Of a stretch of DNA of 64,000 nt, positions 25,601 to 56,436 are shown piece by piece (the first letter of the stretch is position 1; each line of letters begins with the position of its first letter). The position numbers and the translations under genes are program-made. The notes beneath the pieces are model-generated. The model was not told the DNA's origin. It ran no database searches and saw only the letters and a program-made list of their open reading frames with translations. This stretch comes from Glycera tridactyla (lineage: Eukaryota): positions 63,984,001-64,048,000 of the forward strand of contig OZ286461.1 in assembly GCA_965644265.1 (NCBI GenBank). Reading direction: 5' to 3'.

Positions 25601-28249
25601 ATACTCTGGATCATACCATGCTGTATACAGGTCCCCTGGGCCTATTACTACAGTCAGGTCAGTACGATATACTTGACAGCTTTCCCTCCCAATTGCGCCC
25701 ACTCTGAAAAGAAATGTGAGTAAGTCCAAATTCGAAAAAAAATTCGAAGTTGCTTTTCCGTTGAGGATGATAATGTAATCAACAAAGGGGAATCTCTGAG
25801 GTCTTATCTGTGGTGATATGTACTGCTATCCATTGTGGTTTTCACTGAATCCTNNNNNNNNNNNNNNNNNNNNNNNNNNNNNNNNNNNNNNNNNNNNNNN
25901 NNNNNNNNNNNNNNNNNNNNNNNNNNNNNNNNNNNNNNNNNNNNNNNNNNNNNNNNNNNNNNNNNNNNNNNNNNNNNNNNNNAACAACAACATCATCCAC
26001 AAGCACTATCCACCAACACCATCCAGCACCAGATCACCAACCTCACTTTTACCATCAGCATCACCATCACCATTATCATAGAAATTTAATGTGAACCTAA
26101 TGACGATGCAATTCGCGAATACTTTACGAGCCAACTCCATTTTTGCCATTCTACTGCCTGATTTGACAGTTGATGTATAGGGAAAACTGTAGCTTGCAGC
26201 TATGGATGTGTCCCCATCTCAGGCTAGACACATCAGGTGCGAGTAATCGGCTAAATGTGATGGGGTAGTGGTATAATATCAATGTGACCGAGTTTTACTG
26301 ACTGATGTGAGATAATCCCCTACCACATCCGTGCATGCCATCAACCTAATCCATGGGATACATTCGATGTAACCATATAGATAAAAGCAAGAAACCTGAC
26401 ATACGACTAATGACCCTGAGCCGGGGACTAGTCACAGATAGACTCTGTCCATACCGAGGCCAATAAAAGGGAGATGAGTATTGCATTCATTTCATTCAAT
26501 AAATTCTCATGAATCCTTATGAAGGCCAAGATATGGGGTCAAAATGGTCAATTACCATCTCTGCACTCTAACAATTATTTGTACTTGGCGATAGTTGGCC
26601 ATGTGGGAACTATCGAGTTGACCTATATATCTATTCCATGGTCGTTTCGTTTATAACATCAATCCTTTGGTAGCACTTTTGTAGATCGGATTAGCGATAA
26701 TATTCATATCAGTGACACCGTTTATTCGATTGATGGTTCGTGCTTAAGAACTCGTGTCTGNNNNNNNNNNNNNNNNNNNNNNNNNNNNNNNNNNNNNNNN
26801 NNNNNNNNNNNNNNNNNNNNNNNNNNNNNNNNNNNNNNNNNNNNNNNNNNNNNNNNNNNNNNNNNNNNNNNNNNNNNNNNNNNNNNNNNNNNNNNNNNNN
26901 NNNNNNNNNNNNNNNNNNNNNNNNNNNNNNNNNNNNNNNNNNNNNNNNNNNNNNNNNNNNNNNNNNNNNNNNNNNNNNNNNNNNNNNNNNNNNNNNNNNN
27001 NNNNNNNNNNNNNNNNNNNNNNNNNNNNNNNNNNNNNNNNNNNNNNNNNNNNNNNNNNNNNNNNNNNNNNNNNNNNNNNNNNNNNNNNNNNNNNNNNNNN
27101 NNNNNNNNNNNNNNNNNNNNNNNNNNNNNNNNNNNNNNNNNNNNNNNNNNNNNNNNNNNNNNNNNNNNNNNNNNNNNNNNNNNNNNNNNNNNNNNNNNNN
27201 NNNNNNNNNNNNNNNNNNNNNNNNNNNNNNNNNNNNNNNNNNNNNNNNNNNNNNNNNNNNNNNNNNNNNNNNNNNNNNNNNNNNNNNNNNNNNNNNNNNN
27301 NNNNNNNNNNNNNNNNNNNNNNNNNNNNNNNNNNNNNNNNNNNNNNNNNNNNNNNNNNNNNNNNNNNNNNNNNNNNNNNNNNNNNNNNNNNNNNNNNNNN
27401 NNNNNNNNNGGACATCTGGTGAAATTCACACCTTGTTTGGTATTGCTTTTTTACTTCACGGTCATTTAGTCTTGCTTTTATCACATGGATGATGGGATAA
27501 ATCATCAAAAAGTAGTTCTCTATCCATCCAAACCCTCAAACCCAGCAAGCATGTTATTTTGAAGAATTATTCTTTCTTCCAGGTGGATTGATGTTTTCCC
27601 TTTCGTTGCAGGTACCCTATCCAACGAAGAAATACGTCTTGCCACTAACGATATGCTACCCACAGTTTCCTGACCCGGAGTTCGAGAGAGGATTCTTCTT
27701 AGGAGCTGTTTTCCTCACTTGCTATCTCGTGCCACTTTCTTTCATATGTATTTTCTACTGCATGATAGGAGCAAAGGTGAGCAGAAATTTGAAGTGTTGA
27801 ACTGGGGTCCTCTTTCGCTCAAGAGTCTGCATGCACATTATTCAGCCGTCCTAGTCATTGTTGATGAGTTTAGCTCGATGGTTTGCCTCAAGACATCGAC
27901 AGATATACTGTTCCTCTAAATAATGATAATGATAGTAATAATCATAACTATGATAATGATAATACTAGTGATGATAATATTAATTATGATGATAACAATA
28001 TCAATGATGAGACAATACCAGTAGTAGCAGTGGTAGTATCTTCTGTTTGCTTGAGGTTCAACAACAGAGAATTATGTATGCCATGTATTTCTCGTTAATC
28101 AAAGCTAGATGATTTCTCGCCACAGACAGTGATAGTTGTAGTAGTAGTAGTAGTAGTAGTGGTAGTAGTAGTAGTAGGTAGTAGTAGTAGTAAGTAGTAA
28201 GTAATGAGTAACCTTATGTGACAGAGGATATAACAAAACAGAGAAATAA

Positions 28250-39610: not shown

Positions 39611-42414
39611 TGAAGAATTCGTTGGGAATCCTGGGTGAAGGCTGCCCATATAAGATTGAAGATGGTAACATTGCAACTTCCCAGAAAACGTCGAGTGTAT
39701 CTTATTTTTCTTGCGATGACCGAATACGCAGCAAGCAGTCGTCGACTCGTTTCTCGTGTGATGAAATATCCTCGGCAAAACAGTGTGAGATGTGCTCCTA
39801 ATGACCAGAAGCAGATACAACCGGATTCGAACAAAGGTTTGATGACTTCACCGAGAATGTATCATCTATATTGAGCGTCGTGAGTTGCCTCGGTGAAGAT
39901 TGTTCACATGCCGAGCGGGTCACTCGTTATTTGCTCATCCTGGGAAAGCAGTGAGATCTTCGCATCAGGGACCATGAATATAAGCCACTGCCACAGTTTC
40001 TCAACTGATTTCCTTATTCGCCAGAGCTGAATGCTCTCACGTGGGTCCATACATTATATAGCTTTACCGACATCATTATCTCAGAAGTGATCATTCCATA
40101 CGCTACCAATATTGTCGCAATATGTGCCACCGTTTGTATCTTAGCAACGCGATCGGTCGTTGTCGCGAAAAGATGGTCATGAGTACAGCCAGATTAATGG
40201 TCCCATCATTACACAACCCTGTGTGTATGGCCATATTCCAATATCATAGCTCTGTTTTTCCCTCTACCTCCTCATTCCCATCCCATCATCCGTCTTCTTC
40301 TCCCTCTATCGCTCTTTTTCTTCACCTATTGCTATCTTTTTCTTCTTGTAACTCCGTTTGCTACATTTATTTTTCTCCCTATACCAAACTATTTTTGTCT
40401 CCCTGTCTCGGTTTCTGTATCGGTCTTTCCTTATCTGTCTCTCTCGGTCTCTGCCTTATACTTCTCTCTCAATATCTATAACGCCCAATCAGATCCTTAT
40501 CACCATTTTCTATATTTCCTGGCTCCATCTATTCATCTAGTTAACATCCTCCCGGAATATGTTTCATTCATACAGGTTGGAATCAGGCTGAATCAAAGAC
40601 GCTGCTCATTGCTAACAGATCAATATTTCATCCTAACATTTGTATCAAATAATGCAGGAGTGCCAGTCAGATGGATTTAACCCCACGTGTACATCAGTCT
40701 GTTGTCTGAAATACGTTCGACACAGGTATGCTCGAATAGTTGTTCTGCCCCTCTTCGAACCTCATCATCAAATTGTCAGTGTGCGATACGGATATATTTC
40801 ATGTCGTGATAATGCTTCCTCGTTTGTACAAATCCATGAAATATGATTATGTAAATAAATGTATTATAATGGAGTAAGATACTCGATATGTTCCTTTTTC
40901 TCCACTCTAACTCAACAAACCCTATATCAGTCGATGGCATGGTTGTNNNNNNNNNNNNNNNNNNNNNNNNNNNNNNNNNNNNNNNNNNNNNNNNNNNNNN
41001 NNNNNNNNNNNNNNNNNNNNNNNNNNNNNNNNNNNNNNNNNNNNNNNNNNNNNNNNNNNNNNNNNNNNNNNNNNNNNNNNNNNNNNNNNNNNNNGTGGGG
41101 TATATAGACTGTTAAGAGCAATGGAATCCACCATCAGTCACCGTGGTCCACCTAGCTTTAATAAGCAGTATTCTGATGAGGGGCAGTGTGACTGCTTGGC
41201 AGGCTTCACACCTGTACTATACAGAGAGGCATTAGCACGTCATTATAGGGATTCTATGCCGGACAACTATTGCTAGTGCCAAATAATGTCAGACCATTAC
41301 GACTGACACTTCTGATGCGGCAATGAGGGGTCCACCTATTTAGCATCTGTCGTCGTTGCTCCCATTAGGATGTCAATAACGACGTCCAACACCACGATCA
41401 TCACCTCTTTCATCACCAGGTAGTATGATGATTCCGATGTTGTTACTGCTGCTGCTCTAGGTGGGTTTTTTGTGTGTATGGGCTCAATGTCCTTTCAGCC
41501 ATTTTGGATTATATCAGAGGAAGATTAAATGAAAAATACTTCAGCCTTCCTTGGATGTAATCAGAGCAGATAGAAGGGACGTCAAACCAAACAAAAGAAC
41601 GAACAAACGAACGGACGGACCAACAATAATAGTAGCAGCAGAATCCCCTCACTACTGAAACTAACAATCTAGGCGACAACAACGACAACCACATTACCAC
41701 CATCATGGCTCTTATAAGTTCGCCCGTAGCATCCACAAACATTGCGATCGGGACTCGGGTCGCAAAGGTATACACGTCATGGACAGGTGTATTCAGGCTA
41801 CGTGAGGTGCCCAGTCGTGTCTCAGCAACGAGACAGGGCATGCAAAATGATTTGGGTCGATACATGTCGCAAAACCCCACCCGAACCCTAACCATCACCG
41901 CTGCTTTCGCCTGTGACAAATATTACACTCTTCTCACAGCCTGATCTATCTCCGTATCAAGGATTCTGACTGACTCGAATGCACAGGGGGAGTTGCAGAT
42001 AAGGAAAGATGGACTCTTCCGTACATTTCGAACCCATTCCTCAAACATAATTCGTGAAGAATGCATCACACACCCGACTCCATCACTGTTCAAGTCGTGC
42101 CACACGCAACAACAGAATCATTCTGAGTTCTTCTTTGAGAATTCAAGACAAGCTATTACTCTTCTTGCTACCACATTCTCACGTGAGACTTGTAAGCGGG
42201 TTGAATATGAATGATAAAGCATTGGTCATTCAGTTCGCAAAAATGACAAACACAGAATTTACACATTTACGCTGCTGCAACGTTTTGAGCAACAACTTCA
42301 CCCAATTCGATTGCGACGACTGCCTTCAATGCTTAAGGCGCTAGATCTCACATGATCTTAGTCATAGTGTGGACGGCCCTGATGGATTGTGCAGGAATTC
42401 TGGTGACCATCGAA

Positions 42415-42630
42415 CCCCCCCAGGTTTATTCATTTAACCTGGGGATCTATACTTACCCATTTCTCCCTCAAATTCTGCATTCCCCAGGCCGAAGGGCCTA
42501 CGTGCGAACATAACTACAAGAACTTTTTAGGATGACAGCCCTCCCGTTGATGGGATCCACTAGGTGGCTCCCCTTATGATGCCTCCCGACGTCACCCGGC
42601 AACCGCTGTGTCTCTGTGTATTTTTTCAAC
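42415..42630 (-). repeat. DIRS 3' inverted terminal repeat (42443-42630) plus 28-bp terminal extension (42415-42442)
   Basis: See the 5' ITR. The extension CCCCCCCAGGTTTATTCATTTAACCTGG has no counterpart at the 5' end and contains a 9-bp hairpin (CCCCAGGTT/AACCTGGGG). Confidence 0.93.
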
Positions 42631-42677
42631 GAGCTTATATATAGCTCTACAGCGGGGACGGACGGGAGGGACCATCC

Positions 42678-42771
42678 AATTTGAGGGAGAAATGGGTAAG
42701 TATAGATCCCCAGGTTAAATGAATAAACCTGGGGGGGATCTATCTGTACCATTTCTCCCTCAAATTCTGCA
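42678..42771 (-). other. DIRS internal complementary region (ICR)
   Basis: 42678-42737 is the exact reverse complement of 42415-42474. 42736-42771 is the exact reverse complement of 50250-50285. The two halves meet in a G7 run. Confidence 0.95.
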
Positions 42772-42802
42772 ATGAATATGACACGGCTGGAGGGTGTAGA
42801 GC

Positions 42803-43025
42803 AACTACTCTCTGTGTCTCTCAGGTTCTCATACCTTAACCAAGGTAAAATAAAACCATTTATTCCCGAGACTTCAATTGTTAGAACTATAGATATGTAC
42901 AATTATATAATACACAGAACTACCCTCTGTGTCTCTCGGATCACCTACCTGCGAACAGGTAAAATAAAATTTTTAGTTGTTCCAAGTCTTCAATGAATTA
43001 TAAGCTATGAACTATATACAACTGT
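42803..43025. repeat. Diverged about 115-bp tandem duplication in the DIRS 3' non-coding region
   Basis: AACTAC(T/C)CTCTGTGTCTCTC...AGGTAAAATAAAA...CTTCAAT...CTAT at 42803 and again at 42918. Confidence 0.7.
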
Positions 43026-43037
43026 AGTTACATATTC

Positions 43038-45962
43038 TTATTCTCCTGGGTCAACTATTGATTGTGCTGCTACAATTGGTCCCAGAGAATACAAACTCAA
43101 CGCTTGGCCACACATATTACGTAAATAGAAATTGCCAAACGTATTGCCTGACTTCCAGAACGCAGCTCTCATTATATCCTCCACTGATCCTGCTTGATTT
43201 AATGAATTCCAGGATGTAGAGATTGCTCTCAATTCATGAGCTGAGATATTGTCTGGAAGTTCAGAACTCCTCTCCGCCTCTTCATACGACATTTTCACTA
43301 CCTGCTGAATCCAGCTTGAAATTCTATCAATTCCGATCTCTTTAGAGGTATTCTTGTTCGGCGGAATGAATAACCGGACTCTGTTACGCCTGAAACCTGA
43401 CACTCTTTGCAAATATATAAATAATGATCTCACTGGACACAGTGACTTGTCCTCATTATTGCATAGATCATTTGATAATGCTGGGATAATCACCTCTGGT
43501 GATTTGCTGGTAGGTTTCTGGGATTTAGCTAGAAACCCCGGAACCGAAAAGAGTGTGACCTTGGATTTGTCTCCTGCAAATATAACAGATCCAGGCGATC
43601 CGGAAAAAGCATGAACTTCGCTTCGGCGTCTACCCGAGGCCAGTGAAAGTAAGAAAACTGTCTTTCTTGTCAAATTGAGAATACCACAAGAATCCAAGGG
43701 TTCAAATTGTGGACCTTGTAAAAACTTCAGAACTATAGACAAGTCCCATTGTGGAATAGATCTCTGAATCACTGGCCTCTCCAGTTCAAAATTATTCTGC
43801 AGCGCTTTAACGTCCCTACTATTCAACACATTACAGCCTGAAAAAACAAAAACAGACTGAAGTGCGTTTCTATAACCTCTGACTGTAGCTTGAGAAAGAC
43901 CTGATTCGAATAATTCAATCAGAAAATTCACCACGTCTGGTGTAGAGGGACACGTGTTATCCACCCTGTGTTCTCTACACCAGACACTCCACTTCGTCCA
44001 CCTACAGTCATAAATCTTTGCTGACGAATCTCTGATTGATTTAGAGATCCGCTCCGCTGCCGCTGCAGAATAACCTTTCCTGGAGAGGGCACCCCGGATA
44101 GACACCAAGCGGTTAAGTTCATTACTTGGGGTCTGAAGTGGTGGACAATCTTGTTGCCCACTCTCTGAGTCATCAGATTCTTCACCGGAGGAAGTTCTAT
44201 TGGCTGATCTATTGATAATTCCAGGAGATCTGGAAACCACGACTGGTTTGGCCACCAAGGAGCTATACAAACCAGTGTGATTCCCAGACCCCTCAGACAT
44301 CTGATGACTTCTCTCAGAAGAGCTGTCAGCGGGTAAACATACGCCGTCCCGAACTTGCTCCAGTCCACTGACAGAGCGTCCACAGCATACGCTGTCTGAT
44401 CCGGGTATGGACATATGAATATTGGAAGGCGAGAATTCTCTCTTGTTGCCATTATGTCTATTGTTGGAGATATATTGAATTTGGCTATTATCTGATTGAA
44501 AATTTCTTGGTCTAAGGACCATTCGGTTTGGATTGGAACTGCTCGAGATAAGGCATCCGCTAACACATTCTGTCGACCTGGAATGTGCCTTACTCTGATC
44601 AGACAATGAATCTCCTCCGCCAACATGAATATTTGCCAAGCTAGGCCGCAAAGAAGTGATGAATGAGTCCCCCCTTGCTTTTCCAGATAAGAGACCGTAG
44701 TAGTGTTGTCTGTTAGTATCAGAATGACTCTGTTTGATAGGAAGTTCTGAAACTCTGTTAAGGACAATAGAACAGCCTCTAATTCCAAGGCGTTTATTGA
44801 CCTTCCTATCCGAGATTGGGACCAAATCCCTGAGGTTTCCCTCTTCTCCTGACCCTCTGTCATACACGCCCCCCACCCTTTGAGGGACGCATCCGTCATT
44901 AAAGTTACGGATGACTTCTGAGGTTTCAGTGGTATTCCACTGTAAACGTTGTTTCTCTCCTGCCACCATCTGAGGGAAACAAGAATTTCCTCTGGCAGTG
45001 ATATCAACACCTCTAGTGGGTCTGCAAATGGTCTCCATCTGGAAAGAAGAAATATCTGGAGGGGTCTCATGTTGAGACGGCCTAGATGTACAAAATCTGC
45101 TAGACTCGACTTGTGGCCGAGTACCCGAAGCACAGCTCTGACTGGCTGCCGAGGACGTCTGAGAAAAACTCTCACACAAAGATCCAGTCGTTCTATCCTT
45201 TTCAGTGCTGGGCGCACCAACCCCTCCTGGGTGTCGAACTCGATACCCAGGTAGGTGAATTGTCTGCTCGGAATTAAATCCGACTTCTGATGATTGACAA
45301 TCCACCCCAGGTTGGTGGTCAGCGAGAGTACATAATCCAACTGATTGGATAGAGTGACTGGGTCCTGGTGCCTCAGCAGCCAGTCGTCTAGGTAAAAATG
45401 AATCTTGATACCTAGATAGTGTGAGTGGTGCGCCACCTCCCTCAGTACCATCGTAAATACCCTGGGCGCAGAACAAAGACCGAAAGGGAGGGCCCTGAAC
45501 TCGTAAGCCTCCACTTTGGACACGGCAAATCGAAGGTATTTGTGGAATGATGGATGAATCGGGACATGGAAGTACGCATCCTTGAGGTCTATTGAAACTG
45601 TCCAGTCTAGAAGGGAAACTGATTTTACTACCGACATCGCGGTTTCCATCTTGAATTTCTGATTTCTCATGAGAAGATTCAAGGGCCCTAAATTTATCAT
45701 GGGCCTGAAACCCCCTGATGCTTTCTCTACTAGAAAGAGATTGCAGTAGAATCCTGGATCTACTGGTAACTCCACTGGGACTATTGCACGCTTCTTCAGC
45801 ATCTCTTTGATTTCCAGAAGTAGAGCCTCTTTCTTCGCTTGCGATTTGGGGAGCGAAAAAGGTAGAACTGTCTTTGAAAGAGGTGGTATTTCCTGAAATG
45901 ATAAGGACAGGCCTTGTTCTACTATCTCCAGAACAAATCTGTTCTGAGTAATCTCCTTCCAT
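43038..45962 (-). CDS. DIRS tyrosine recombinase ORF (YR domain about 43038-44100; N-terminal part overlaps the RT ORF)
   Basis: SAM-like N-domain (SIRDSSAKIYDCRWTKW), LASGRRRSEV (catalytic R), HELR (HxxR), FWKSGNTFGNFY (W and catalytic Y). Confidence 0.95.
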   Translation of the reverse strand: MEGDYSEQICSGDSRTRPVLIISGNTTSFKDSSTFFAPQIASEERGSTSGNQRDAEEACNSPSGVTSRSRILLQSLSSRESIRGFQAHDKFRALESSHEKSEIQDGNRDVGSKISFPSRLDSFNRPQGCVLPCPDSSIIPQIPSICRVQSGGLRVQGPPFRSLFCAQGIYDGTEGGGAPLTLSRYQDSFLPRRLAAEAPGPSHSIQSVGLCTLADHQPGVDCQSSEVGFNSEQTIHLPGYRVRHPGGVGAPSTEKDRTTGSLCESFSQTSSAASQSCASGTRPQVESSRFCTSRPSQHETPPDISSFQMETICRPTRGVDITARGNSCFPQMVAGEKQRLQWNTTETSEVIRNFNDGCVPQRVGGVYDRGSGEEGNLRDLVPISDRKVNKRLGIRGCSIVLNRVSELPIKQSHSDTNRQHYYGLLSGKARGDSFITSLRPSLANIHVGGGDSLSDQSKAHSRSTECVSGCLISSSSNPNRMVLRPRNFQSDNSQIQYISNNRHNGNKREFSPSNIHMSIPGSDSVCCGRSVSGLEQVRDGVCLPADSSSERSHQMSEGSGNHTGLYSSLVAKPVVVSRSPGIINRSANRTSSGEESDDSESGQQDCPPLQTPSNELNRLVSIRGALSRKGYSAAAAERISKSIRDSSAKIYDCRWTKWSVWCREHRVDNTCPSTPDVVNFLIELFESGLSQATVRGYRNALQSVFVFSGCNVLNSRDVKALQNNFELERPVIQRSIPQWDLSIVLKFLQGPQFEPLDSCGILNLTRKTVFLLSLASGRRRSEVHAFSGSPGSVIFAGDKSKVTLFSVPGFLAKSQKPTSKSPEVIIPALSNDLCNNEDKSLCPVRSLFIYLQRVSGFRRNRVRLFIPPNKNTSKEIGIDRISSWIQQVVKMSYEEAERSSELPDNISAHELRAISTSWNSLNQAGSVEDIMRAAFWKSGNTFGNFYLRNMCGQALSLYSLGPIVAAQSIVDPGE

Positions 45963-46024
45963 TGACTGATAAACCCCAGGAGACGCGCTCCCACGACCGG
46001 ATTCACTGAAGGTGTGACGCCCAA
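43928..46024 (-). CDS. DIRS reverse transcriptase / RNase H / methyltransferase-like ORF
   Basis: GFRPMINL, IDLKDAYFHVPI, LPFGLCSAPRVF, YLDD (45383-45394). RNase H: TDAS...ELEAV...TDN...ADALSR. MT-like: IDIMATREN...AYVYPL...IAPWWPNQSWF. No ATG at the start (TTG). Confidence 0.97.
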   Translation of the reverse strand: MGVTPSVNPVVGARLLGFISQWKEITQNRFVLEIVEQGLSLSFQEIPPLSKTVLPFSLPKSQAKKEALLLEIKEMLKKRAIVPVELPVDPGFYCNLFLVEKASGGFRPMINLGPLNLLMRNQKFKMETAMSVVKSVSLLDWTVSIDLKDAYFHVPIHPSFHKYLRFAVSKVEAYEFRALPFGLCSAPRVFTMVLREVAHHSHYLGIKIHFYLDDWLLRHQDPVTLSNQLDYVLSLTTNLGWIVNHQKSDLIPSRQFTYLGIEFDTQEGLVRPALKRIERLDLCVRVFLRRPRQPVRAVLRVLGHKSSLADFVHLGRLNMRPLQIFLLSRWRPFADPLEVLISLPEEILVSLRWWQERNNVYSGIPLKPQKSSVTLMTDASLKGWGACMTEGQEKRETSGIWSQSRIGRSINALELEAVLLSLTEFQNFLSNRVILILTDNTTTVSYLEKQGGTHSSLLCGLAWQIFMLAEEIHCLIRVRHIPGRQNVLADALSRAVPIQTEWSLDQEIFNQIIAKFNISPTIDIMATRENSRLPIFICPYPDQTAYAVDALSVDWSKFGTAYVYPLTALLREVIRCLRGLGITLVCIAPWWPNQSWFPDLLELSIDQPIELPPVKNLMTQRVGNKIVHHFRPQVMNLTAWCLSGVPSPGKVILQRQRSGSLNQSEIRQQRFMTVGGRSGVSGVENTGWITRVPLHQTW

Positions 46025-46028
46025 CGCC

Positions 46029-48620
46029 CTAGGGCCGGCGTTTCTTACCTCTGCCTCTAGGTCTCTGGAATGTTACATTGACTTCCTGTTTGGGCTTGTT
46101 GCTGGACTGGTTGAACTGTGTATGGTCCTCAGACTTATTCTGACCTCCACCTCTGCCACGGCCCCTGCCCCTATTGCTTTGACCCCTACTCCTAGGGCCA
46201 TTCCAGCCACCTTTTCCTCTCTTCTGGTACCCTCCCCTGTTAGAGAAAGTGTTAGAAGAATCTGTATGCCTCTGTCTGAAGTCATAAGCATTCTCTCTGG
46301 ACCGTCTGCCAACCTTGAAAGACTGTTTAGAGGCATCGGCCAGTCTGCCCCCAAACAATTCCACCTGACCCAAAGGGAGAGACCTCAATTGGGCCTTGGT
46401 CTCCTCATCAAAGTCTGTGCCCTTAAGGGCCGCGGAACGACGGGACAACTCCATGTTGCCCGCCACTTTCAAAACTAATTGGGTCGCATGTTTCACAGCT
46501 AGTAGCCCAATTCTCGTGGCATCTTTAGCCTTGGTCTTCACATCCTTGATGTCAGCATCTGTTACTTCAGACGCCCCTAGTCCCGCTGCCAATGCGAAAT
46601 CCGCATAACTCAATGCTTTCAAGGACTCCCTAAGAGTAATCTCATCATTGTTGGGCTTCAATTCTATCTTTGGTGTCCGACCATATCTCACATAATCCCT
46701 ATCAATCACTGGTGATTCCACCAAGTACCTATGGGATCTCTCGCCAGTCCTACGAATCCGGTATGACCTCGGATTACAGCCGTAAACACGAGGCATATTG
46801 ACCCTAAAATATTTAACGCTCGGGTCCTGCAGACCTTCACGTCCCAACTTGAAGGATTCAAGAGGCGTAGAAATATTATGAAGCTGTTGAAACCTATCCA
46901 AACCTTGTAAGGCCTTATCTAACTTCTCCTGACTCTCTATCAAAAGCGGAGAAATAGGGAGAGAGGTCTCGGCTATATTATCTACCTCTTGTTCTAGAAT
47001 CTGGGCATCTGCATCTGTTCCAGTGGTTCTATAGGCCACCCCTGAACCCTTCGGATCAGAAGTTTCTGGTTCTGGGATGTATGAAGGCAGAATTTCGGCA
47101 GCAAACTTCCTAAATCCTCTCAGCCGTCTACGTACAGCAGGCTGCTCCTTCTCTTCTTCTGAATCTCCAGGAGAATCCTCATGTCTATTCTTCTCCTCTT
47201 TCTGATCTAATCTTTCCCTCATTCTCTCCATATTCTCCTTCAATGAGGAAATCTGAGCATCCCTCTCCTTGTCCTCCCTACTTATACTATTCCTAGTGAC
47301 TACTGGAACTCCTGAAACCAAGGGCATTTGTATTTGATTCATCTGGGCCACTTGACCAGGTGCTGCTGCCGTACTAGGAGGACAAGATCTTTTGGCTAAA
47401 CGAGAGGGGTCTCCCATTGAAACATCTCTTTTCCTTTTACCCGTAAAGTTAATCTGTTGAGGGGCGACAGGAGTACCTAAACTCATCCGAGTATCCAACA
47501 TAAGCTTCTTTACAGCAGCTAAAGACGCTTCCATCTGCTGTCTATGAGCTTGCAAGTCTTTCAGTTTACTTGCCGCCATCCTCCTATCCAGATCCGGTGA
47601 GCCAAATACAGAAGTTGGTAAAGGCTGAACGTTAGAATTCATACCAGCTAATAACTGGCCATGATCAACCGACGAAATATTGATATTTGTGGCAGTACTG
47701 GGTTGTGACAACACTGGAACCCTCGATATTGTTTTCAGAGGTCCTTGGCTCTGAAGATATTGTGGCTGAATAGGAGGTTGATGCGGAATTTGAGATGACA
47801 CAGGAGTAGTAATGGAAAAATTCAAGGGTGTATGTACTTGTGACATAGGAATCTGAGGTGATTGAACCACATGGGATGAAGCACGCGACAAATCTAAGAC
47901 CTGCCCAGTCATATTTGTACTAGTACTCACTGGTAGTGTACTATTTGTACACAAATTCAATCCACACTGTCCAGTCAATGGTTGTCCCGCCGGGGTACTA
48001 ACCTGAACCAATTTAGATGCAACCTGATCTACTTGCTGAACAATAGCATGATTCCCATTATTGTGAGTAGAAGAAACTACGTCTCCCTCTGAGGAACCTT
48101 GACCAGAGTGTGAGTCCCCCTGACTCAAAATTTCCACACACTGTCCTGTCCCCTCAACAGATTGTGTGTTCTCTGGATACTCTGGAGGAACTCTCTGTAC
48201 AGCCACTACATTGATAGGGTCTTCCTTCTCAGGAACATATACATTATCATAGTAACCACCATGTGGAATAACTGGGAGTGGAGCATAAACAGAATCTTCA
48301 TCTTCTGAATCTTCAGCTACCCCTGCTTCATGCTGTACAGAGAGATCATTATCTACCCCACCATCCAAATGTGACAGTCCATGAGGTAATCCAGAAGGTT
48401 CGGTTCCTTTGTCCATTTCCCCTGTTCTATCCTCCGATGCCGAGGATCTATGACAGGAAGCCTGCTGTTGCAAACCAGATTTTGTGCTAGCAACTGATAA
48501 CTTGGTTTTAGAGGCTCTCTCCACATTCATTTGTTTCCTCTTTCTAAGGGAAGCTACCAGCTGAGGTCTAGAAGCCAATTCATCAGCGAGGCTACCTAAA
48601 CTAGAAGCCGTGTCCCCCAC
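46029..48620 (-). CDS. DIRS ORF1 (gag-like), main body
   Basis: 863-codon ORF upstream of RT with a low-complexity Q/S/P middle, LSRR...LRSLPL...ELFGG and a C-terminal RGG-rich tail (RGQSNRGRGRGRGGGQ). Confidence 0.85.
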   Translation of the reverse strand: MGDTASSLGSLADELASRPQLVASLRKRKQMNVERASKTKLSVASTKSGLQQQASCHRSSASEDRTGEMDKGTEPSGLPHGLSHLDGGVDNDLSVQHEAGVAEDSEDEDSVYAPLPVIPHGGYYDNVYVPEKEDPINVVAVQRVPPEYPENTQSVEGTGQCVEILSQGDSHSGQGSSEGDVVSSTHNNGNHAIVQQVDQVASKLVQVSTPAGQPLTGQCGLNLCTNSTLPVSTSTNMTGQVLDLSRASSHVVQSPQIPMSQVHTPLNFSITTPVSSQIPHQPPIQPQYLQSQGPLKTISRVPVLSQPSTATNINISSVDHGQLLAGMNSNVQPLPTSVFGSPDLDRRMAASKLKDLQAHRQQMEASLAAVKKLMLDTRMSLGTPVAPQQINFTGKRKRDVSMGDPSRLAKRSCPPSTAAAPGQVAQMNQIQMPLVSGVPVVTRNSISREDKERDAQISSLKENMERMRERLDQKEEKNRHEDSPGDSEEEKEQPAVRRRLRGFRKFAAEILPSYIPEPETSDPKGSGVAYRTTGTDADAQILEQEVDNIAETSLPISPLLIESQEKLDKALQGLDRFQQLHNISTPLESFKLGREGLQDPSVKYFRVNMPRVYGCNPRSYRIRRTGERSHRYLVESPVIDRDYVRYGRTPKIELKPNNDEITLRESLKALSYADFALAAGLGASEVTDADIKDVKTKAKDATRIGLLAVKHATQLVLKVAGNMELSRRSAALKGTDFDEETKAQLRSLPLGQVELFGGRLADASKQSFKVGRRSRENAYDFRQRHTDSSNTFSNRGGYQKRGKGGWNGPRSRGQSNRGRGRGRGGGQNKSEDHTQFNQSSNKPKQEVNVTFQRPRGRGKKRRP

Positions 48621-48904
48621 AGACTTGGGGCCTGAATTGATTTTGCAACATTCTTATGCAGAGCAGCAGGCTCGGACTTCCTAGATGAAAGGGAGGGGCC
48701 ACGAGATTGCAATGACAGAGACCTCAATTTATAATGAGCTGCCCATCTATCTAATGGCCATATTGCACAAATTGCACAAACTTTTTGACCTTTGGTCATC
48801 ACATCGTCGGAATTCCCACACTCTCTACAGCATGGACAATAATCATGGTTATCCCAGTTGGCCATATGGTGACCACACAAACCCTGTTTTTGTCCCGACG
48901 ACAT
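48596..48904 (-). CDS. DIRS ORF1 N-terminal Cys/His zinc-finger segment (out of frame with the rest of ORF1)
   Basis: ATG start; CGHHMANWDNHDYCPCCRECG...CAIC is a Cys/His cluster of the kind found at the start of DIRS ORF1. Overlaps the next ORF in a different frame. Confidence 0.7.
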   Translation of the reverse strand: MSSGQKQGLCGHHMANWDNHDYCPCCRECGNSDDVMTKGQKVCAICAIWPLDRWAAHYKLRSLSLQSRGPSLSSRKSEPAALHKNVAKSIQAPSLWGTRLLV

Positions 48905-49284
48905 TTCAAGGTTGAAGGGGAGGGATCAACAATAAACGCAAGACCAGAATGGATGCCGGTTTTCTTCTGTACCGGAGTAGGCAATCAATAAACACCGAAA
49001 GGGCAACCGTTATTGGGCATATGATACAGACAGGATGCTATCGGCTTGTATCAACTAAGTTCATCAATCCATTTAACCTATATTGACAAGTGGCAACTGA
49101 TATGAAATTCACAGACTCACTAAAGAGCCATTTCAAAACCACTTACTCTTCAGTGTAGTATCAGATATGAAAATCACAGATCCTCAAAGAAGATCATTTC
49201 AAACACAAGCAAATTGCAATTAGGGGACTGCTACCATGCACCAGCGCCGCGTCCTTGACAACGTACACAAACAGTTATACCAGT

Positions 49285-49652
49285 AGCGATCAAATTGATA
49301 AAGTGAATCTAATACAATTGATAATCATCTACGACAGCAACCGTAGGCAAGGTCAACTGTCGACGGAGCGCGCATTTTTCCTTATCTGCGAACCCCTGCG
49401 AATATTTGATGCATTCGAACGACATCACCACGCTACCGAATTTCGCCAGCTACCATAAACCGCCGCTGTCAGCGATCAAGATTGACAAAGTGAATCTGAT
49501 ACAATTGATAATCATCTACGACAGCAACCGTAGGCAAGGTCAACTGTCGACGGAGCGCGCACCTTATCTGCGAACCCCTGCGGATATTTGATGCATTCGA
49601 ACGACTTCGCAACGCTACCGAATTTCGTCGGCTACCCTTTACCGCCGCTGTC
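49285..49652. repeat. 186-bp tandem duplication in the DIRS 5' leader
   Basis: Copies start at 49285 and 49471 (AGCGATCAA...ATCATCTACGACAGCAACCGTAGGCAAGGTCAACTGTCGACGGAGCGCGCA...CCGCCGCTGTC). Confidence 0.9.
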
Positions 49653-50099
49653 AAACTATCGCGGGACGGTCCCGGCGACGCGTCCCTGACAACGTAAACA
49701 CCCCGCGCTACATACAAGCAATAAACACAGTCAAAACTCGGATATTGATATGAAATTCACAGATCTTAGAGTAAGATCATTTCAACAGGATAAGGTAAAC
49801 TGTCAACATTGATACAAGCCCAAGTATGGAGCCCCGAACGACAGCACACGGCAGTCAACATCGGTGTCTCGGCATCCAAAACCGCGGTCTACGCGGACTC
49901 CCCTCCCCGATCAACACAGGCAAACGTTCGCAAAACTATCCAATTTGATACATATATCCTTCAGGATCCAAGTATGATATTCCGATATGATACACGAAAC
50001 TACTATAAAACCTGAAAGAAAATCGGATAGCCGTAGGCCTCGTAAATAACAATTTTTTTACGGAGCCCAGGTATTCTACAACTGCTCTCAACAAGCGAA

Positions 50100-50285
50100 G
50101 TTGAAAAATACACAGAGACACAGCGGTTGCCGGGTGACGTCGGGAGGCGTCATAAGGGGAGCCACCTAGTGGATCCCATCAACGGGAGGGCTGTCATCCT
50201 GAAAAGTTTTTGTAGTTATGTTCGCACATAGGCCCTTCGGCCTGGGGAATGCAGAATTTGAGGGAGAAATGGTACAGATAGATCC
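50100..50285 (-). repeat. DIRS 5' inverted terminal repeat
   Basis: Reverse complement of 42443-42630 with four substitutions, one T indel and one short non-matching block near the end (CTGTA vs ACTTAC). Confidence 0.95.
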
Positions 50286-50910
50286 TGTAATTATGGTCTG
50301 AGATATGTTCTGGCAACTCCAATCGCGGGGGGTGCGTTTTTCGCACTAGCAACACGAATTCGGATCAGATCGGGTTAAAAGTGATATACAGACATTGTTG
50401 ACATCCCCGGCGACAAAATATTTAATTTTGACAAGGTTATCTTGTTTTTTTCCCCATAGAGTGCCAAACATGTCGTGGTTTCATGGCGGATGCCGCGGCC
50501 ATAACTCTACTGTTTCTTCAACAAATAGTCACCGATAATGCCGGCAAATCCACCGTGAATATGGTGGCATATCATCTTCAAAGACATGCAGACTACACAA
50601 AACCAGGTTCGATGATCACCGGAAGACGTATCATTCCATGCGTGCTATCAAAACTCAGCTGGGCAAGAAATGGCGAATTTATAGCATGGAACATACCCGC
50701 CACAGTTGGATATGACGGAGTTTAGTTCGCATACGCCTTGATTCCATTGCACTTATACGGCGAGACCACAGACAACATCGACTACACTTCATTTTTCGAA
50801 CCATGGGGATGTAGCCTACGATCTCGTTCTATGGATGTCGTGAAATTAACGTAGGCAAGGAGATGTCAGTGGTAACGACGGAGACGCACGTTCGTCAAGG
50901 TCGTATTTGG

Positions 50911-53718: not shown

Positions 53719-56436
53719 GAGTCATAGGTCAATACATACATCAGAAATGTGTTAGTTGTTAATGATACATTTGACCCCCGGCCCCTGACGGGCCTACAAG
53801 ACTTTAGTGTTAGTATATTCCATATTAAGATAAGTGTGTGGTATATATTTATGTACACCCCTGTCCACATTCAGAATTGTTCTGGGGGGAGGACCTGAAC
53901 TTGGTGTTGATATTAATGGGGTGTTGGTCCGTTATTTGTGTGTGTGTGCTCATGTTAGGCTGTTATCTGGTCTTCGTATGGCATTTGGTTTGTGTCGGCA
54001 GTGTGTTCAAGTGAGAGGATAAGTTGATAAATACATATATATGTGGATGGTTGAATAGAACGACGAGTGGATGAATAAAGATGTATATATCTGTGTATAT
54101 AGCCAGGAATAACTCAGTTGGGTGGTTTAACGTGGTAAAAGGGTGAGTATCATATCATGTATATCTGGTCAAGTGTGGAATTATGTCAGATGAATATATA
54201 TATAGGTAGATATAGTTGTAGTTAAAAATGGGTATATCGATGGGAGGCAGACAAAATAGTAATAAGTGAGCAGGTAAATAGTTTCGGTGCGAGTAAAAGT
54301 GGTGGATGGCACATATGTAGTCTGGTACTTGGAATTCATATAAATAGGCGTATATAGGGAGTAAAAAGGTGTATGGGGCTAACAGAGGTTGTATATGTAT
54401 ATAAGAATATAGTATATAATATAATATGGGCATTATCGTCTGCCTAGGCTACCTTGAGGTGGGAATAAGATGCTTCTTCTCTCCATAAGCATTTCTTCTG
54501 ATGATTTGCCGAAGATCGTGATATTAGTAGGCTGTCCGGAGAACTTTATCTTTTGGTAGTCATCCGTGTCCTCGAAATTGTCCGGGAGGGTCATATTGTC
54601 CAGAAGCTTTCGTAGTTGCGGCGCAAATTTTGAGCATTTTAGGACAAAGTGGACCTCATCTTTGACTTCACCGGAGTTGCATAAGACACATGTCCTTTCT
54701 TCCGGCCTTTTTCCTGCGTATCTCCCTGTCTCTATCTCTAGTGGCATGATTCCGCAAAGTAATTTAGCCATAATGGAGCGTTGGTTTCTTGTAAGACTGG
54801 ATCTAGCAAGTGTGAGAGGCCGGTCAAATTCTTTAATTTTAATGTATGTGCGTAACTTAGGCTTGTTCTTTGCTTCCTCAGTCCTATCAGCTCGTGCCTT
54901 GTCATATAGGCGGTTATTGATATCTCTAAGGCATATTTGTGAGTCAGGATCATAATCCAGGTCCAATTCTTGGTGTATAGCCAGAACTTCAGACAGCCAG
55001 CCTATCGATCCCTGGTCTTGGTCCCACTTGTGGACTTTCTTAGGGATTTTGTTGCTTTTCATTTGTGTCAACCTATTGTAATACCTGAGAATATCCAGCC
55101 ATCTGTGGAAAGCCATGGGTATTGCATCCATCTCTGTGTGAGTGGCTGCCAAAGGGGCGAATCTATGCAATCCTAGATAAAATCTAATGATCCTGTTGTG
55201 TAATACCTGGGGGTCTGGGTAGTCCCTGAGTCCCCACACCCCCGCCCCATAGTTGGCCACCGGGAGAACATATGTTTCAAATAAAGTATTGTATATGTCA
55301 TACCCCATATCCTTGAGGGTTTTGAACATATTGATTATTCTCCCGAACGACCTCCCAGCGGCGGCGGTGAGGGCATCCAGCGTTTTATTGTAGTTTAAAA
55401 ACTCATTCACCCAGCACCCCAGGTATTTGTAATTTTCAACAAATTCAAGTTCATTGTGCCCTAGCATAAAATTCTGTCCTATACGAGGTCGTTGTTTGTT
55501 TCTTACGTGCACCACCTGGCTTTTTTTCACATTAATTTTCATTCCCCAGGTGGTGCACCAAGAGTCTAGTATATTCAACATACATTGCATATCAGCCGCA
55601 GACCCACCTATCAGCACAATATCGTCTGCATAGAGTAAGATACTAAGCTGTTCATCTCCGACCTGGACACCATAACCTGCTTCTATTACTTCCTCTGCCA
55701 GATCATTGATGTATAGTGCGAATAAGGTAGGGGAAAGAGAGTCCCCTTGTCTCACTCCTGACTGGACGGGAAACCAGCCTGACAGCATGCCGTTCAGCCT
55801 TACACAGCTCGATGGTGACATATATGTAGCCCTGATTGCATCATAAATTCTCCCCTCAATACCATATTTCAGTAACTTATGAAACATGAGCTCGTGGTTT
55901 ACATAGTCGAAGGCCTTCTGGAAATCTATAAAGGCACAAGAGGTTTCTCCATTCCTACTCTTCCTGATTCTTAGGATGTTGTCTAAAGAATATATATGAT
56001 CCAGACAAGAGCGATCTGAACGGAAACCGTTTTGTTCATTGACTAAGATGTTATTTTTTTCCAGAAAGCCTCCGACTGTGCTCGCCACGAGCCCTGTGAA
56101 CAGTTGACTTGCTACAGAGAGAAGACTAATCCCTCTGTAGTTGAGGGGTACTCTGGGGTCGCTGTTGTAGTGACGCTGGGTTGAGACTAGTAATTGTTGC
56201 TCTTTTGCTCTGTTGTCAGAAATAATAATGTTGTTCGAATTGCTCTGCTCGTCCGGGTCCAAAGTGGGTGGTGTCAGCAGTGACCCAAAGTCCCTCTCCC
56301 AAACCTTCAGTACATCATCAATGTTGGATAAAATCGTGCCATCTGGTCCGTAGACCTCGTTGGGGATAGGTTTTTGTGGCTTACGGCCCATTTTCTTAAC
56401 ATCTTCCCAGAATTGGGTCGGGTCATCAACACAGGC
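53719..56436 (-). mobile_element. Non-LTR retrotransposon (LINE), RTE-group/RTE-X-like (clade tentative), 5'-truncated, internally deleted
   Basis: RT ORF 54433-56391, about 700-nt AT-rich 3' UTR, and a small GC hairpin (53780-53794) just before the N-gap where a microsatellite tail would be expected. The reading frame continues to ACVDDPTQFWEDVKK at about 56436. Confidence 0.85.
54433..56391 (-). CDS. LINE ORF2: reverse transcriptase plus C-terminal CCHC domain, no endonuclease
   Basis: NYRGISLLS, EQNGFR..RSC.DH, FIDFQKAFD, GVRQGDSLSPTLF, YADD, YKYLG; C-terminal IETGRY...CVLC...HF..C. Confidence 0.95.
   Translation of the reverse strand: MGRKPQKPIPNEVYGPDGTILSNIDDVLKVWERDFGSLLTPPTLDPDEQSNSNNIIISDNRAKEQQLLVSTQRHYNSDPRVPLNYRGISLLSVASQLFTGLVASTVGGFLEKNNILVNEQNGFRSDRSCLDHIYSLDNILRIRKSRNGETSCAFIDFQKAFDYVNHELMFHKLLKYGIEGRIYDAIRATYMSPSSCVRLNGMLSGWFPVQSGVRQGDSLSPTLFALYINDLAEEVIEAGYGVQVGDEQLSILLYADDIVLIGGSAADMQCMLNILDSWCTTWGMKINVKKSQVVHVRNKQRPRIGQNFMLGHNELEFVENYKYLGCWVNEFLNYNKTLDALTAAAGRSFGRIINMFKTLKDMGYDIYNTLFETYVLPVANYGAGVWGLRDYPDPQVLHNRIIRFYLGLHRFAPLAATHTEMDAIPMAFHRWLDILRYYNRLTQMKSNKIPKKVHKWDQDQGSIGWLSEVLAIHQELDLDYDPDSQICLRDINNRLYDKARADRTEEAKNKPKLRTYIKIKEFDRPLTLARSSLTRNQRSIMAKLLCGIMPLEIETGRYAGKRPEERTCVLCNSGEVKDEVHFVLKCSKFAPQLRKLLDNMTLPDNFEDTDDYQKIKFSGQPTNITIFGKSSEEMLMERRSILFPPQGSLGRR

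What the first reader, a model, noticed from the sequence alone, without database searches (positions are those of the whole stretch)
42415..50285. DIRS element that appears to circularise and integrate through a C/G run (CC overlap) rather than a T run
Seen: the left boundary is GAA-CCCCCCC-AGG (7 C), the right boundary is GAT-CC-TG (2 C), and the ICR, which spells the end-to-end junction, has exactly 7 G (42731-42737). Inference: the circular intermediate has the junction GAT-CCCCCCC-AGG. Conservative tyrosine-recombinase crossover at a genomic GAA-CC-TG gives 7+2 C, as observed, so the overlap is CC, possibly within a GA(A/T)CC context. Established (from memory, to be verified): Dictyostelium DIRS-1 and many DIRS1-like elements are described with TTT termini and T-rich targets. 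A G/C-overlap family would be a distinct target-specificity variant.
Basis: partly seen in the sequence, partly recalled or inferred. Interest (0 to 1): 0.7.

Follow-up and report, generated by a model that had tools for sequence, protein, structure and literature searches.

The report
DIRS retrotransposon with poly-C circle junction
This is an intact, very abundant DIRS-type retrotransposon whose two ends join through a run of seven C, and it inserts without duplication at short A-A-(A/T)|C…G-(A/T)-T-T sites, so only one C, not a CC or a C run, is shared with the target.

Summary
Window 42415-50285 is a complete DIRS1-like element on the minus strand. It has a 7-C left end, GAT-CC at the right end and 7 G in the internal complementary region (ICR).

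The inferred circle junction GAT-C7-AGG exists in this genome as head-to-tail tandem junctions: two were read and at least 15 more were mapped. Seven empty sites show conservative insertion with no duplication or loss. Three are paralogous, and four are independent hits at one phase of a 165-bp satellite.

The "CC overlap" does not hold. Of 89 right ends, 64 carry one C, 24 carry two and 1 carries three. The exchange falls at W|C in both partners.

The target is a pseudo-palindrome, R-A-W|C-N4-5-G-W-T-Y. T occurs at +8 and +9 in about 75% of sites. In sense orientation this is a GTT/GAT-type site like those of ordinary DIRS1-like elements.

Two things are unusual. A C7-8 run fills the donor's crossover region, and a junction hairpin leaves three C unpaired. 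Three related families share both features (RT 61% and YR 54% identity to the window copy in the two other families), while more distant relatives have A/T-rich junctions.

Verdict: a new variant of a known kind, of moderate interest.

The parts
42412..42414 (+). Target-derived left half-site GAA (consensus R-A-W) directly before the exchange point
   Evidence: Across 28 independent left flanks, -3 is a purine in 27, -2 is A in 24 and -1 is A or T in 28. Empty sites retain these bases.
42415..42421 (+). C7 run. This is the first 7 nt of the element in window orientation, equivalent to the G7 at the 3' end of the sense strand. It is the donor's crossover region.
   Evidence: It equals the G7 of the ICR and the C7 of the tandem junctions.
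42415..42456 (+). Terminal extension outside the ITR proper. It contains the hairpin CCCCAGGTT-9 nt-AACCTGGGG (42418-42444).
   Evidence: D11, I2. Fold energy is -9.1 kcal/mol, z = -4.1.
42457..42625 (+). Inverted terminal repeat, window-left arm (the element's 3' ITR)
   Evidence: I1: 169 nt, 98% complementary to 50104-50272.
42678..42771 (+). Internal complementary region. It spells the end-to-end junction, with G7 at 42731-42737.
   Evidence: I2 and I4.
43041..44000 (-). Tyrosine recombinase coding region (C-terminal part of ORF 43038-45962)
   Evidence: R125, K159, H255-x-x-R258, W282 and Y292 are invariant in alignment A1, which includes homologues carrying Pfam PF00589. Pfam on the protein itself gives only Phage_int_SAM_1 at E = 0.17.
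43928..46024 (-). RT / RNase H / presumed methyltransferase-like ORF (698 aa)
   Evidence: RVT_1 E = 2.5e-18 and RT_RNaseH E = 5.5e-5. The YLDD motif is visible. 1,684 homologues were found.
46029..48620 (-). ORF1 (863 aa), gag position, no Pfam family
   Evidence: It is 36% identical over 518 aa to ORF1 of the relative L061, E = 5e-83.
49294..49653 (+). Two ~185-bp direct repeats in the leader between the 5' ITR and ORF1
   Evidence: D1 and D2 (90-98% identity).
50104..50283 (+). Inverted terminal repeat, window-right arm (the element's 5' ITR), ending ...ACAGATAGAT
   Evidence: I1 and I4.
50284..50293 (+). Target-derived right half: CC (+1, +2) then TGTAATTA, with T at +8 and +9
   Evidence: +1 is C in 32/32 file copies and in all non-chance rows. 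T at +8 and +9 is 26/32 each (p = 4e-9), and 42/57 and 41/57 by hand count.

Best explanation
This is a young, high-copy DIRS1-like tyrosine-recombinase retrotransposon. It encodes ORF1, RT/RNase H and YR on the minus strand, and has ITRs and an ICR.

Its ends are joined on the ICR into a junction ...ACAGATAGAT|CCCCCCC-AGGTTT. The element-encoded YR then exchanges strands directly 5' of the first C, at W|C, in both the junction and a genomic site with consensus R-A-W|C-N(4-5)-G-W-T-Y. The products are flank-RAW + C7AGG... on one side and ...GAT + C-flank on the other. There is no target duplication or loss.

The C run is therefore the donor's crossover region, not a motif required in the target. 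Only its first base must match. A second or third C in the target is tolerated and stays at the right junction.

The target's inverted half-sites (AAWC / GWTT, 6-7 bp between the symmetric W|C positions) have the geometry of a classical YR core site.

Shown here: the anatomy, the junction sequence, the exchange position, the absence of a TSD, the target consensus and the intact catalytic residues. Inferred: that a circle is the substrate, that the YR catalyses the step, and where the second strand is exchanged.
For: Anatomy and coding capacity.

Junction: L074 and L033 are right-ITR-GAT-C7-AGG-left-ITR. At least 15 more full-length junction matches exist, whereas ICRs match only query positions 22-115.

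Empty sites:
- L004/L048: gaat|CCC|atcg gives left C7 and right C3.
- L016/L037: aaaa|C|tttag gives C7 and C1.
- Four insertions sit at the same phase of a 165-bp satellite. The empty monomer reads ccaaat|cacaaaatt. The filled site reads aaat+CCTTCCC-AGG...GAT+cacaaaatt, and these copies' ICR also reads CCTTCCC.
- Those four elements are 98.9-99.7% identical, but their flanks are only 82-94% identical, so the hits are independent.
- Two nested insertions lie in the TTTAA|CC|TGGGGATC site of older copies.

Target consensus: left flanks; right flanks (n = 32; 57 further right ends, hand count). GWTY starts at +6 or +7 in 39 of 89 sites against about 3.7% expected.

No alternative junction classes were seen: no left end with fewer than 7 C before AGG, and no right end with GAT-C6 followed by flank.
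Against: - The donor junction does not fit the target consensus in register. GTTT lies at +10 to +13, not +6 to +9, so a symmetric 6-7-bp staggered exchange is not obviously possible on the donor.
- 8 of 28 left runs are longer than the copy's own ICR run (8-21 C). In the CC targets (L013/L039 and the nested cases) only one C stays on the right. The exchange point may therefore slide within C identity, or the runs may be unstable. The segmental duplicates L028 and L029 differ, 11 against 8 C.
- 4 of 28 left flanks end GA, not AW.
- The flank sample is about 90 right ends and 28 tabulated left ends (about 35 read) out of roughly 1,200 copies, and part of it was counted by hand.
- No biochemical or read-level evidence for a circle was obtainable.
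Confidence: 0.75

Rival explanations
1. The recombinase uses a CC (or C-run) overlap, and the family is a G/C-specific target variant distinct from T-run DIRS elements.
For: The window copy has 7+2 C, and its ICR arms overlap by GG. Targets with CCC or CC occur. A second C is slightly enriched, 25/89 against 20% background. G at +2 is depleted, 5/89. In CC targets the exchange seems to slide within the Cs.
Against: 64 of 89 right ends have one C only. The satellite and L016 empty sites have a single C. Positions +2 to +5 of the target are otherwise unconstrained, and the strongest target signals are A/T (A at -2, T at +8 and +9).
Confidence: 0.08
2. The ordinary textbook 3-bp model. The circle trinucleotide GAT (sense; ATC in window orientation) recombines with any GWT in the genome. 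The C run and the downstream GWTT signal would be incidental.
For: In sense orientation the element starts GAT and is followed by WT after its last G, like TnDIRS1a (GTT/GAT) in Table 3 of PMC3266345. In the satellite sites the shared identity is exactly ATC.
Against: The -1 base is A in 19 of 28 copies while the element has T, so identity over 3 bp is not required. T at +8 and +9 (about 75%) and G at +6 or +7 are far above background. Four independent hits at one phase of a 165-bp monomer and two hits in the same site of older copies indicate recognition of more than 3 bp. The C run with 3 unpaired C is conserved in three families.
Confidence: 0.1
3. The donor is a folded single strand. The minus-strand cDNA (which has the window + strand sequence) closes on the ICR. 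The junction hairpin (12-bp stem with three extrahelical C) would be the recombination site, as in integron attC x attI, with one strand exchange and resolution by replication.
For: The hairpin across the closed junction is predicted in three families despite sequence change, each with 3 unpaired C (z = -3.5 to -5.8). With the 3 C looped out, the donor reads GAT|CCCCAGGTTT, which matches the target consensus in register. Only one junction class is seen, as expected from a single strand exchange. DIRS-1 cDNA is reported to be mainly single-stranded (PMC7192593).
Against: This rests purely on predicted structure. The hairpin is also explained by the ITR/extension layout needed for ICR pairing. 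There is no evidence on strandedness in this organism. A double-stranded circle with directional repair gives the same products.
Confidence: 0.1
4. The C run is non-templated (RT tailing) or an assembly artefact.
For: Run lengths of 8-21 occur. The duplicates L028 and L029 differ.
Against: The run is encoded as G7 in the ICR of the same copies, is 7 in 20 of 28 left ends and in the tandem junctions, and recurs as C7-8 in independent assemblies of related families.
Confidence: 0.02

Closest known systems
DIRS1-like retrotransposons with GTT/GAT termini (TnDIRS1a, SkoDIRS2 in PMC3266345; TcDIRS1 as cited in PMC9210276)
   Same: Same gene set, ITRs, ICR spelling the junction and absence of a TSD. 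On the sense strand this element starts GAT and inserts at G|WT(T).
   Different: The junction trinucleotide is preceded by a G7 (C7) homopolymer that lies in the crossover region. Identity with the target is reduced to one base. The element is larger (7.9 kb against about 5-6 kb), with an 863-aa ORF1.
AmDIRS1 of Allomyces macrogynus (PMC3266345, Table 3)
   Same: It is the only listed DIRS1-like element with a G/C-rich junction (CGG/GCG, junction CG).
   Different: It is fungal, has a left extension only, has no homopolymer, and was not compared by sequence here.
Dictyostelium DIRS-1 (Cappello model; PMC7192593)
   Same: The ICR acts as a splint for joining the cDNA ends. Copies are clustered and nested or tandem.
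   Different: DIRS-1 has an A/T junction (TTA/TAA) and prefers to insert into other DIRS-1 copies. Here only 2-3 of about 40 insertions are in own-family DNA, always at one site.
Classical tyrosine-recombinase core sites (loxP, FRT, dif) and integron attC x attI
   Same: The target consensus has inverted half-sites 6-7 bp apart, with exchange at the arm/overlap boundary. A G|TT-type crossover and a bulged hairpin recall integron sites.
   Different: The half-sites are only 3-4 bp. The donor and target overlaps are not homologous. No biochemical data exist. The YR is a eukaryotic DIRS type with no significant PDB sequence match.

Membership tests
DIRS1-like retrotransposon | Reverse transcriptase plus RNase H of Ty3/Gypsy-like type | tested here: met
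   RVT_1 E = 2.5e-18. RT_RNaseH E = 5.5e-5, just under the Pfam cut-off. YLDD motif present.
DIRS1-like retrotransposon | Tyrosine recombinase with the catalytic R-K-H-R-(H/W)-Y residues instead of a DDE integrase | tested here: met
   R125, K159, H255, R258, W282 and Y292 are invariant in A1, which includes PF00589-bearing homologues. The Pfam match on the protein itself is not significant. The AlphaFold model is too poor to use (pLDDT 55).
DIRS1-like retrotransposon | Methyltransferase-like domain after RNase H | not tested
   About 200 aa follow the RNase H domain in the 698-aa ORF, but no profile for this domain was available. Its identification rests on recalled resemblance only.
DIRS1-like retrotransposon | Inverted terminal repeats, plus an ICR complementary to both termini, next to the 3' ITR | tested here: met
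   I1, I2 and I4. The ICR lies between the YR ORF and the window-left (3') ITR.
DIRS1-like retrotransposon | Insertion without target-site duplication | tested here: met
   Seven empty sites.
DIRS1-like retrotransposon | 3-bp NTT trinucleotide at both ends, complementary to a 3-bp circular junction | tested here: inconclusive
   The sense strand starts GAT and is followed by WT after the last G, so a GAT/GWT reading is possible. The middle base differs from the element's in 68% of copies, and only G/C is always shared.
Canonical YR core site (inverted arms, 6-8-bp overlap) | Inverted recombinase-binding half-sites flanking the exchange points | tested here: inconclusive
   The target consensus RAWC-N4-5-GWTY is statistically strong. 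The donor junction does not share the spacing, and cleavage positions on the second strand are unknown.
Integron-like folded single-strand site | Hairpin with extrahelical bases used as a single-stranded substrate | not testable with these tools
   The hairpin with 3 unpaired C is predicted in three families. Strandedness of the substrate is unknown.

The most novel reading that the evidence does not exclude
The conserved junction hairpin with three looped-out C is the real donor site. A folded single-stranded cDNA circle would recombine with double-stranded RAW|C...GWTT targets by a single strand exchange resolved by replication. This would be a eukaryotic analogue of integron attC x attI recombination, and would explain both the homopolymer and the single junction class.
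Probability: 0.1. Interest if true: 0.85.

Novelty: new variant of a known kind. Interest (0 to 1): 0.5.

Why it matters
How DIRS elements integrate is still a paper model. The recombinase's specificity has never been measured (PMC7192593), and the literature describes only a 3-bp motif.

This family has more than 1,000 near-identical copies, genomic copies of the closed junction and exact empty sites. Together these give a concrete, testable rule: exchange at W|C, one shared base, and a 12-13-bp pseudo-palindromic target.

It also has a clade-specific oddity, a C7-8 crossover region with three unpaired C, that any mechanism must explain.

The clustering of same-phase insertions in a satellite and the frequent head-to-tail arrays are relevant to how such elements build heterochromatin.

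Tried and rejected
- **Sequencing reads:** none was listed for the left flank. No empty allele, circle-junction reads or RNA ends could be examined, and read laying was not used.
- **More genomic flanks:** I stopped extracting flanks after that. The logo rests on 28 left and 32 right ends in files, plus 57 right ends printed and counted by hand.
- **YR identification:** Pfam on the YR and ORF1 gave nothing significant. A PDB sequence search gave no hit. The AlphaFold model had mean pLDDT 55, so no fold search was run.
- **L003/L032:** this insertion in a tandem repeat is ambiguous. Paralogous monomers read gaa-A-catgtg where the filled site has gaa / CC-atgtgg, and monomers are only about 80% alike.
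- **L062:** this relative (48% RT identity) has G11/C13 runs around a 45-bp palindrome, but its termini could not be defined.
- **Preference for own copies:** only L053 and L068 are nested, with L044 possibly a third.
- **Staggered-exchange model:** a 6-bp staggered exchange with a heteroduplex predicts a second junction class (left C1, right C6). None was seen.
- **Other:** earlier findings of the scan returned nothing. The host species was not identified. The nearest protein neighbours are mostly molluscan or come from marine metagenomes.
Full report
**Observation**

- The left boundary is ...tcGAA, then seven C (42415-42421), then AGGTTT.
- The right boundary is ...ACAGATAGAT (GAT at 50281-50283), then CC (50284-50285), then TGTAATT.
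- The inverted repeats 42457-42625 and 50104-50272 are 98% complementary.
- The internal complementary region (ICR) at 42678-42771 is the reverse complement of the first 60 nt of the left end, followed by that of the last 36 nt of the right end.
- The ICR has seven G at 42731-42737. In this copy the two ICR arms overlap by GG.

**What the element is**

All long ORFs lie on the minus strand, so the window-left end is the element's 3' end.
- ORF 43928-46024 carries RT and RNase H (RVT_1 E = 2.5e-18; YLDD motif).
- The last ~320 residues of the overlapping ORF 43038-45962 are a tyrosine recombinase (YR).
- In an alignment with six homologues, some carrying Pfam PF00589, the residues R125, K159, H255-x-x-R258, W282 and Y292 are invariant.
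- ORF1 (46029-48620, 863 aa) matches no Pfam family. It is conserved in a relative: 36% identity over 518 aa, E = 5e-83.
- The first ~650 residues of the 974-aa ORF are a stop-free out-of-frame reading of the RT ORF. This is the long ORF overlap described for many DIRS1-like elements (PMC3266345).

The genome is 2.04 Gb in 207 contigs. A 25-mer from the right end, also present in the ICR, occurs 2,479 times against 0 for the control. That implies roughly 1,200 copies or more. Many copies are 96-99% identical to the window copy.

**The circle junction**

The predicted junction exists in the genome.
- L074 (G000:C1:9924330-9924520) reads right ITR ...ACAGATAGAT, then CCCCCCC, then AGGTTT... left ITR. 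ITR-specific sequence on both sides distinguishes it from an ICR.
- L033 is a second such junction, also with seven C.
- A search with L074 found at least 17 places matching the full 121 nt (lengths 121-126). ICRs matched only positions 22-115.

Head-to-tail arrays are common.

**Empty sites**

Comparing the flanks of about 60 fetched loci gave three paralogous empty sites.

| Insertion | Empty site | Left run | Right run |
|---|---|---|---|
| L004/L048 | gaat\|CCC\|atcg | C7 | C3 |
| L016/L037 | aaaa\|C\|tttag | C7 | C1 |
| L013/L039 | caaa\|CC\|ttttt | C12 (own ICR has 10) | C1 |

Four further elements (L063-L066) sit in a 165-bp satellite.
- More than 20 uninterrupted monomers read ...ggaccaaat|cacaaaattac.
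- The filled sites read aaat + CCTTCCC-AGG ... GAT + cacaaaatt.
- The ICR of these copies carries the same CCTTCCC variant.
- The four elements are 98.9-99.7% identical, but their flanks in the same register are only 82-94% identical. They are therefore independent insertions at one phase and in one orientation.

Two nested insertions lie in the TTTAA|CC|TGGGGATC site of older copies (L024/L053 and L068).

In every exact case nothing is duplicated or lost. The bases left of the exchange are the target's, not the element's: the element would give T at -1, but 19 of 28 copies have A.

**Where the exchange is and what the target looks like**

The run of C after GAT at the right end was counted in two sets.

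| Set | One C | Two C | Three C |
|---|---|---|---|
| 32 independent right ends in files | 22 | 9 | 1 |
| 57 further right ends printed (hand count) | 42 | 15 | 0 |
| Combined (89) | 64 | 24 | 1 |

- A second C occurs in 28% of sites, against a background C frequency of 20%. CC is therefore not required.
- All rows without a C are consistent with the chance rate of the 12-mer (281 control hits against 1,468).
- Left flanks (n = 28): -3 is a purine in 27, -2 is A in 24 (p = 6e-10), and -1 is A in 19 and T in 9.
- Right flanks: +2 to +5 are nearly free, apart from G being rare at +2.
- G is enriched at +6 and +7, at 14/32 each in files and 22/57 and 18/57.
- T dominates +8 and +9, at 26/32 each (p = 4e-9) in files and 42/57 and 41/57.
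- The motif G-W-T-Y starts at +6 or +7 in 39 of 89 sites, where about 3.7% is expected.

The consensus R-A-W|C-N4-5-G-W-T-Y is a short inverted repeat. AAWC is the reverse complement of GWTT, and the symmetric W|C positions lie 6-7 bp apart. That is the layout of a classical YR core site.

The window copy fits: GAA|CC TGTA ATT, with T at +8 and +9.

The simplest rule fitting all exact empty sites is exchange at W|C in both partners. The element's C run then lies in the donor's crossover region. Only its first base needs a match in the target.

**What does not fit neatly**

- Eight of 28 left runs exceed the copy's own ICR run (8-21 C). All of these have a single C on the right. The CC targets are among them, so the exchange may slide within C identity.
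- Homopolymer instability or assembly error is an equally good explanation. The segmental duplicates L028 and L029, with identical 1.4-kb flanks, have 11 and 8 C.
- Four left flanks end GA.
- The donor junction has GTTT at +10 to +13, three to four bases further out than in targets.
- A symmetric staggered exchange between non-homologous overlaps predicts a second junction class (left C1, right C6). I saw none among about 35 left and about 90 right ends.

**A conserved junction hairpin**

Once the ends are joined, the junction folds as a single strand.
- The fold is a 6-bp stem (ATAGAT/ATCTAT), then three unpaired C, then a 9-bp stem (CCCCAGGTT/AACCTGGGG). Free energy is -11.4 kcal/mol, z about -4.
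- The ICR of L061 (61% RT identity, from another assembly) reads GAT-C8-GATTTATTC. Its 3' end is ...AAATC-G8 followed by flank.
- The ICR of L079 (54% YR identity) reads CTAA-C7-AGATT.
- Both fold in the same way, with different stem sequences and again three unpaired C (z = -5.8 and -3.5).
- With three C looped out, the donor reads GAT|CCCCAGGTTT, which matches the target consensus in register.

This numerical fit is the basis of the speculative single-strand (attC-like) reading. It is not evidence of mechanism.

More distant relatives have A/T-rich junctions without G/C runs: L076 (42% RT identity) and L081 (48% YR identity). The homopolymer is therefore a trait of a sub-clade.

**Comparison with the literature**

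- PMC3266345 annotates 28 DIRS1-like elements. 23 begin and end with NTT, most often ATT. Several pair NTT with NAT, for example TnDIRS1a with GTT/GAT.
- Only AmDIRS1 of a fungus is G/C-rich in that set.
- The model in that paper is recombination between a 3-bp junction and an identical genomic trinucleotide.
- Xenopus families end in TTT, and TcDIRS1 is cited there with GTT (PMC9210276).
- PMC7192593 states that YR specificity has not been tested experimentally, and reports mostly linear single-stranded cDNA for DIRS-1.
- I found no description of a homopolymer junction or of an extended palindromic target in the held library. Repbase and Dfam could not be consulted.

On its sense strand this element starts GAT and inserts at G|WT(T). 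Its target class is therefore close to the known GTT/GAT type.

Three things are new: the C7-8 (G7-8) crossover region, the reduction of shared identity to one base, and the evidence for recognition over 12-13 bp.

**Verdict**

This is a new variant of a known kind, of moderate interest. Its main value is as an unusually clean natural dataset for the DIRS integration mechanism.

Noticed in passing
G000:C1 about 49.2-53.5 Mb; L063-L066: Copies are far denser here than in the first 49 Mb of the contig. At least four lie at the same phase of a 165-bp satellite. This may be pericentromeric accumulation, as for DIRS-1 in Dictyostelium.
   Followed up: partly
L074; L033; 15 further places listed (e.g. 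G000:C42:7568057, C4:104079700, C10:111198246): Head-to-tail tandem copies joined by the exact circle junction are frequent. They could arise from integration into the W|C site at a resident copy's end, or from multimeric intermediates.
   Followed up: partly
window 54433-56391 (-): A 652-aa ORF with a strong RVT_1 match (E = 3e-34). It belongs to a different retroelement 4 kb from the DIRS copy.
   Followed up: no
window 26722-27508: ORFs of 222-254 aa are open in five of the six frames over the same ~750 bp. This stop-poor stretch is probably low-complexity or repetitive sequence.
   Followed up: no
L028 / L029 (G000:C21:130596 and 110281): These segmental duplicates have identical 1.4-kb flanks but 11 against 8 C at the left end. 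The terminal run is unstable or poorly assembled.
   Followed up: partly
L005 / L041 (G000:C13:15345537-15353310): 1.19 kb of the left flank recurs at 98.8% identity in the right flank, offset by 210 bp. The element seems to sit inside a larger tandem duplication.
   Followed up: no
window 46029-48620 (-); L061:10-3489: ORF1 is unusually long for a DIRS gag (863 aa here, 1,159 aa in L061). It has a conserved C-terminal ~500 aa and an RG-rich tail, and matches no Pfam family.
   Followed up: partly
L062:6653-6872: A relative with 48% RT identity has G11 and C13 runs flanking a 45-bp perfect palindrome downstream of its YR gene. Its termini could not be defined because the contig ends there.
   Followed up: partly
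L061 (GCA_029979705.1), L081 (GCA_019100385.1, labelled Candidatus Thiodiazotropha sp. ex Ctena orbiculata), P0014: Complete DIRS elements sit on short contigs of assemblies labelled as bacterial symbiont MAGs. This is most likely host (animal) DNA binned by mistake.
   Followed up: no
L076:6653-6744: In the A/T-type relative, the ICR centre GTATTTT-A-AAAATAC is itself a near-perfect palindrome. Its circle junction may form a symmetric core site.
   Followed up: no
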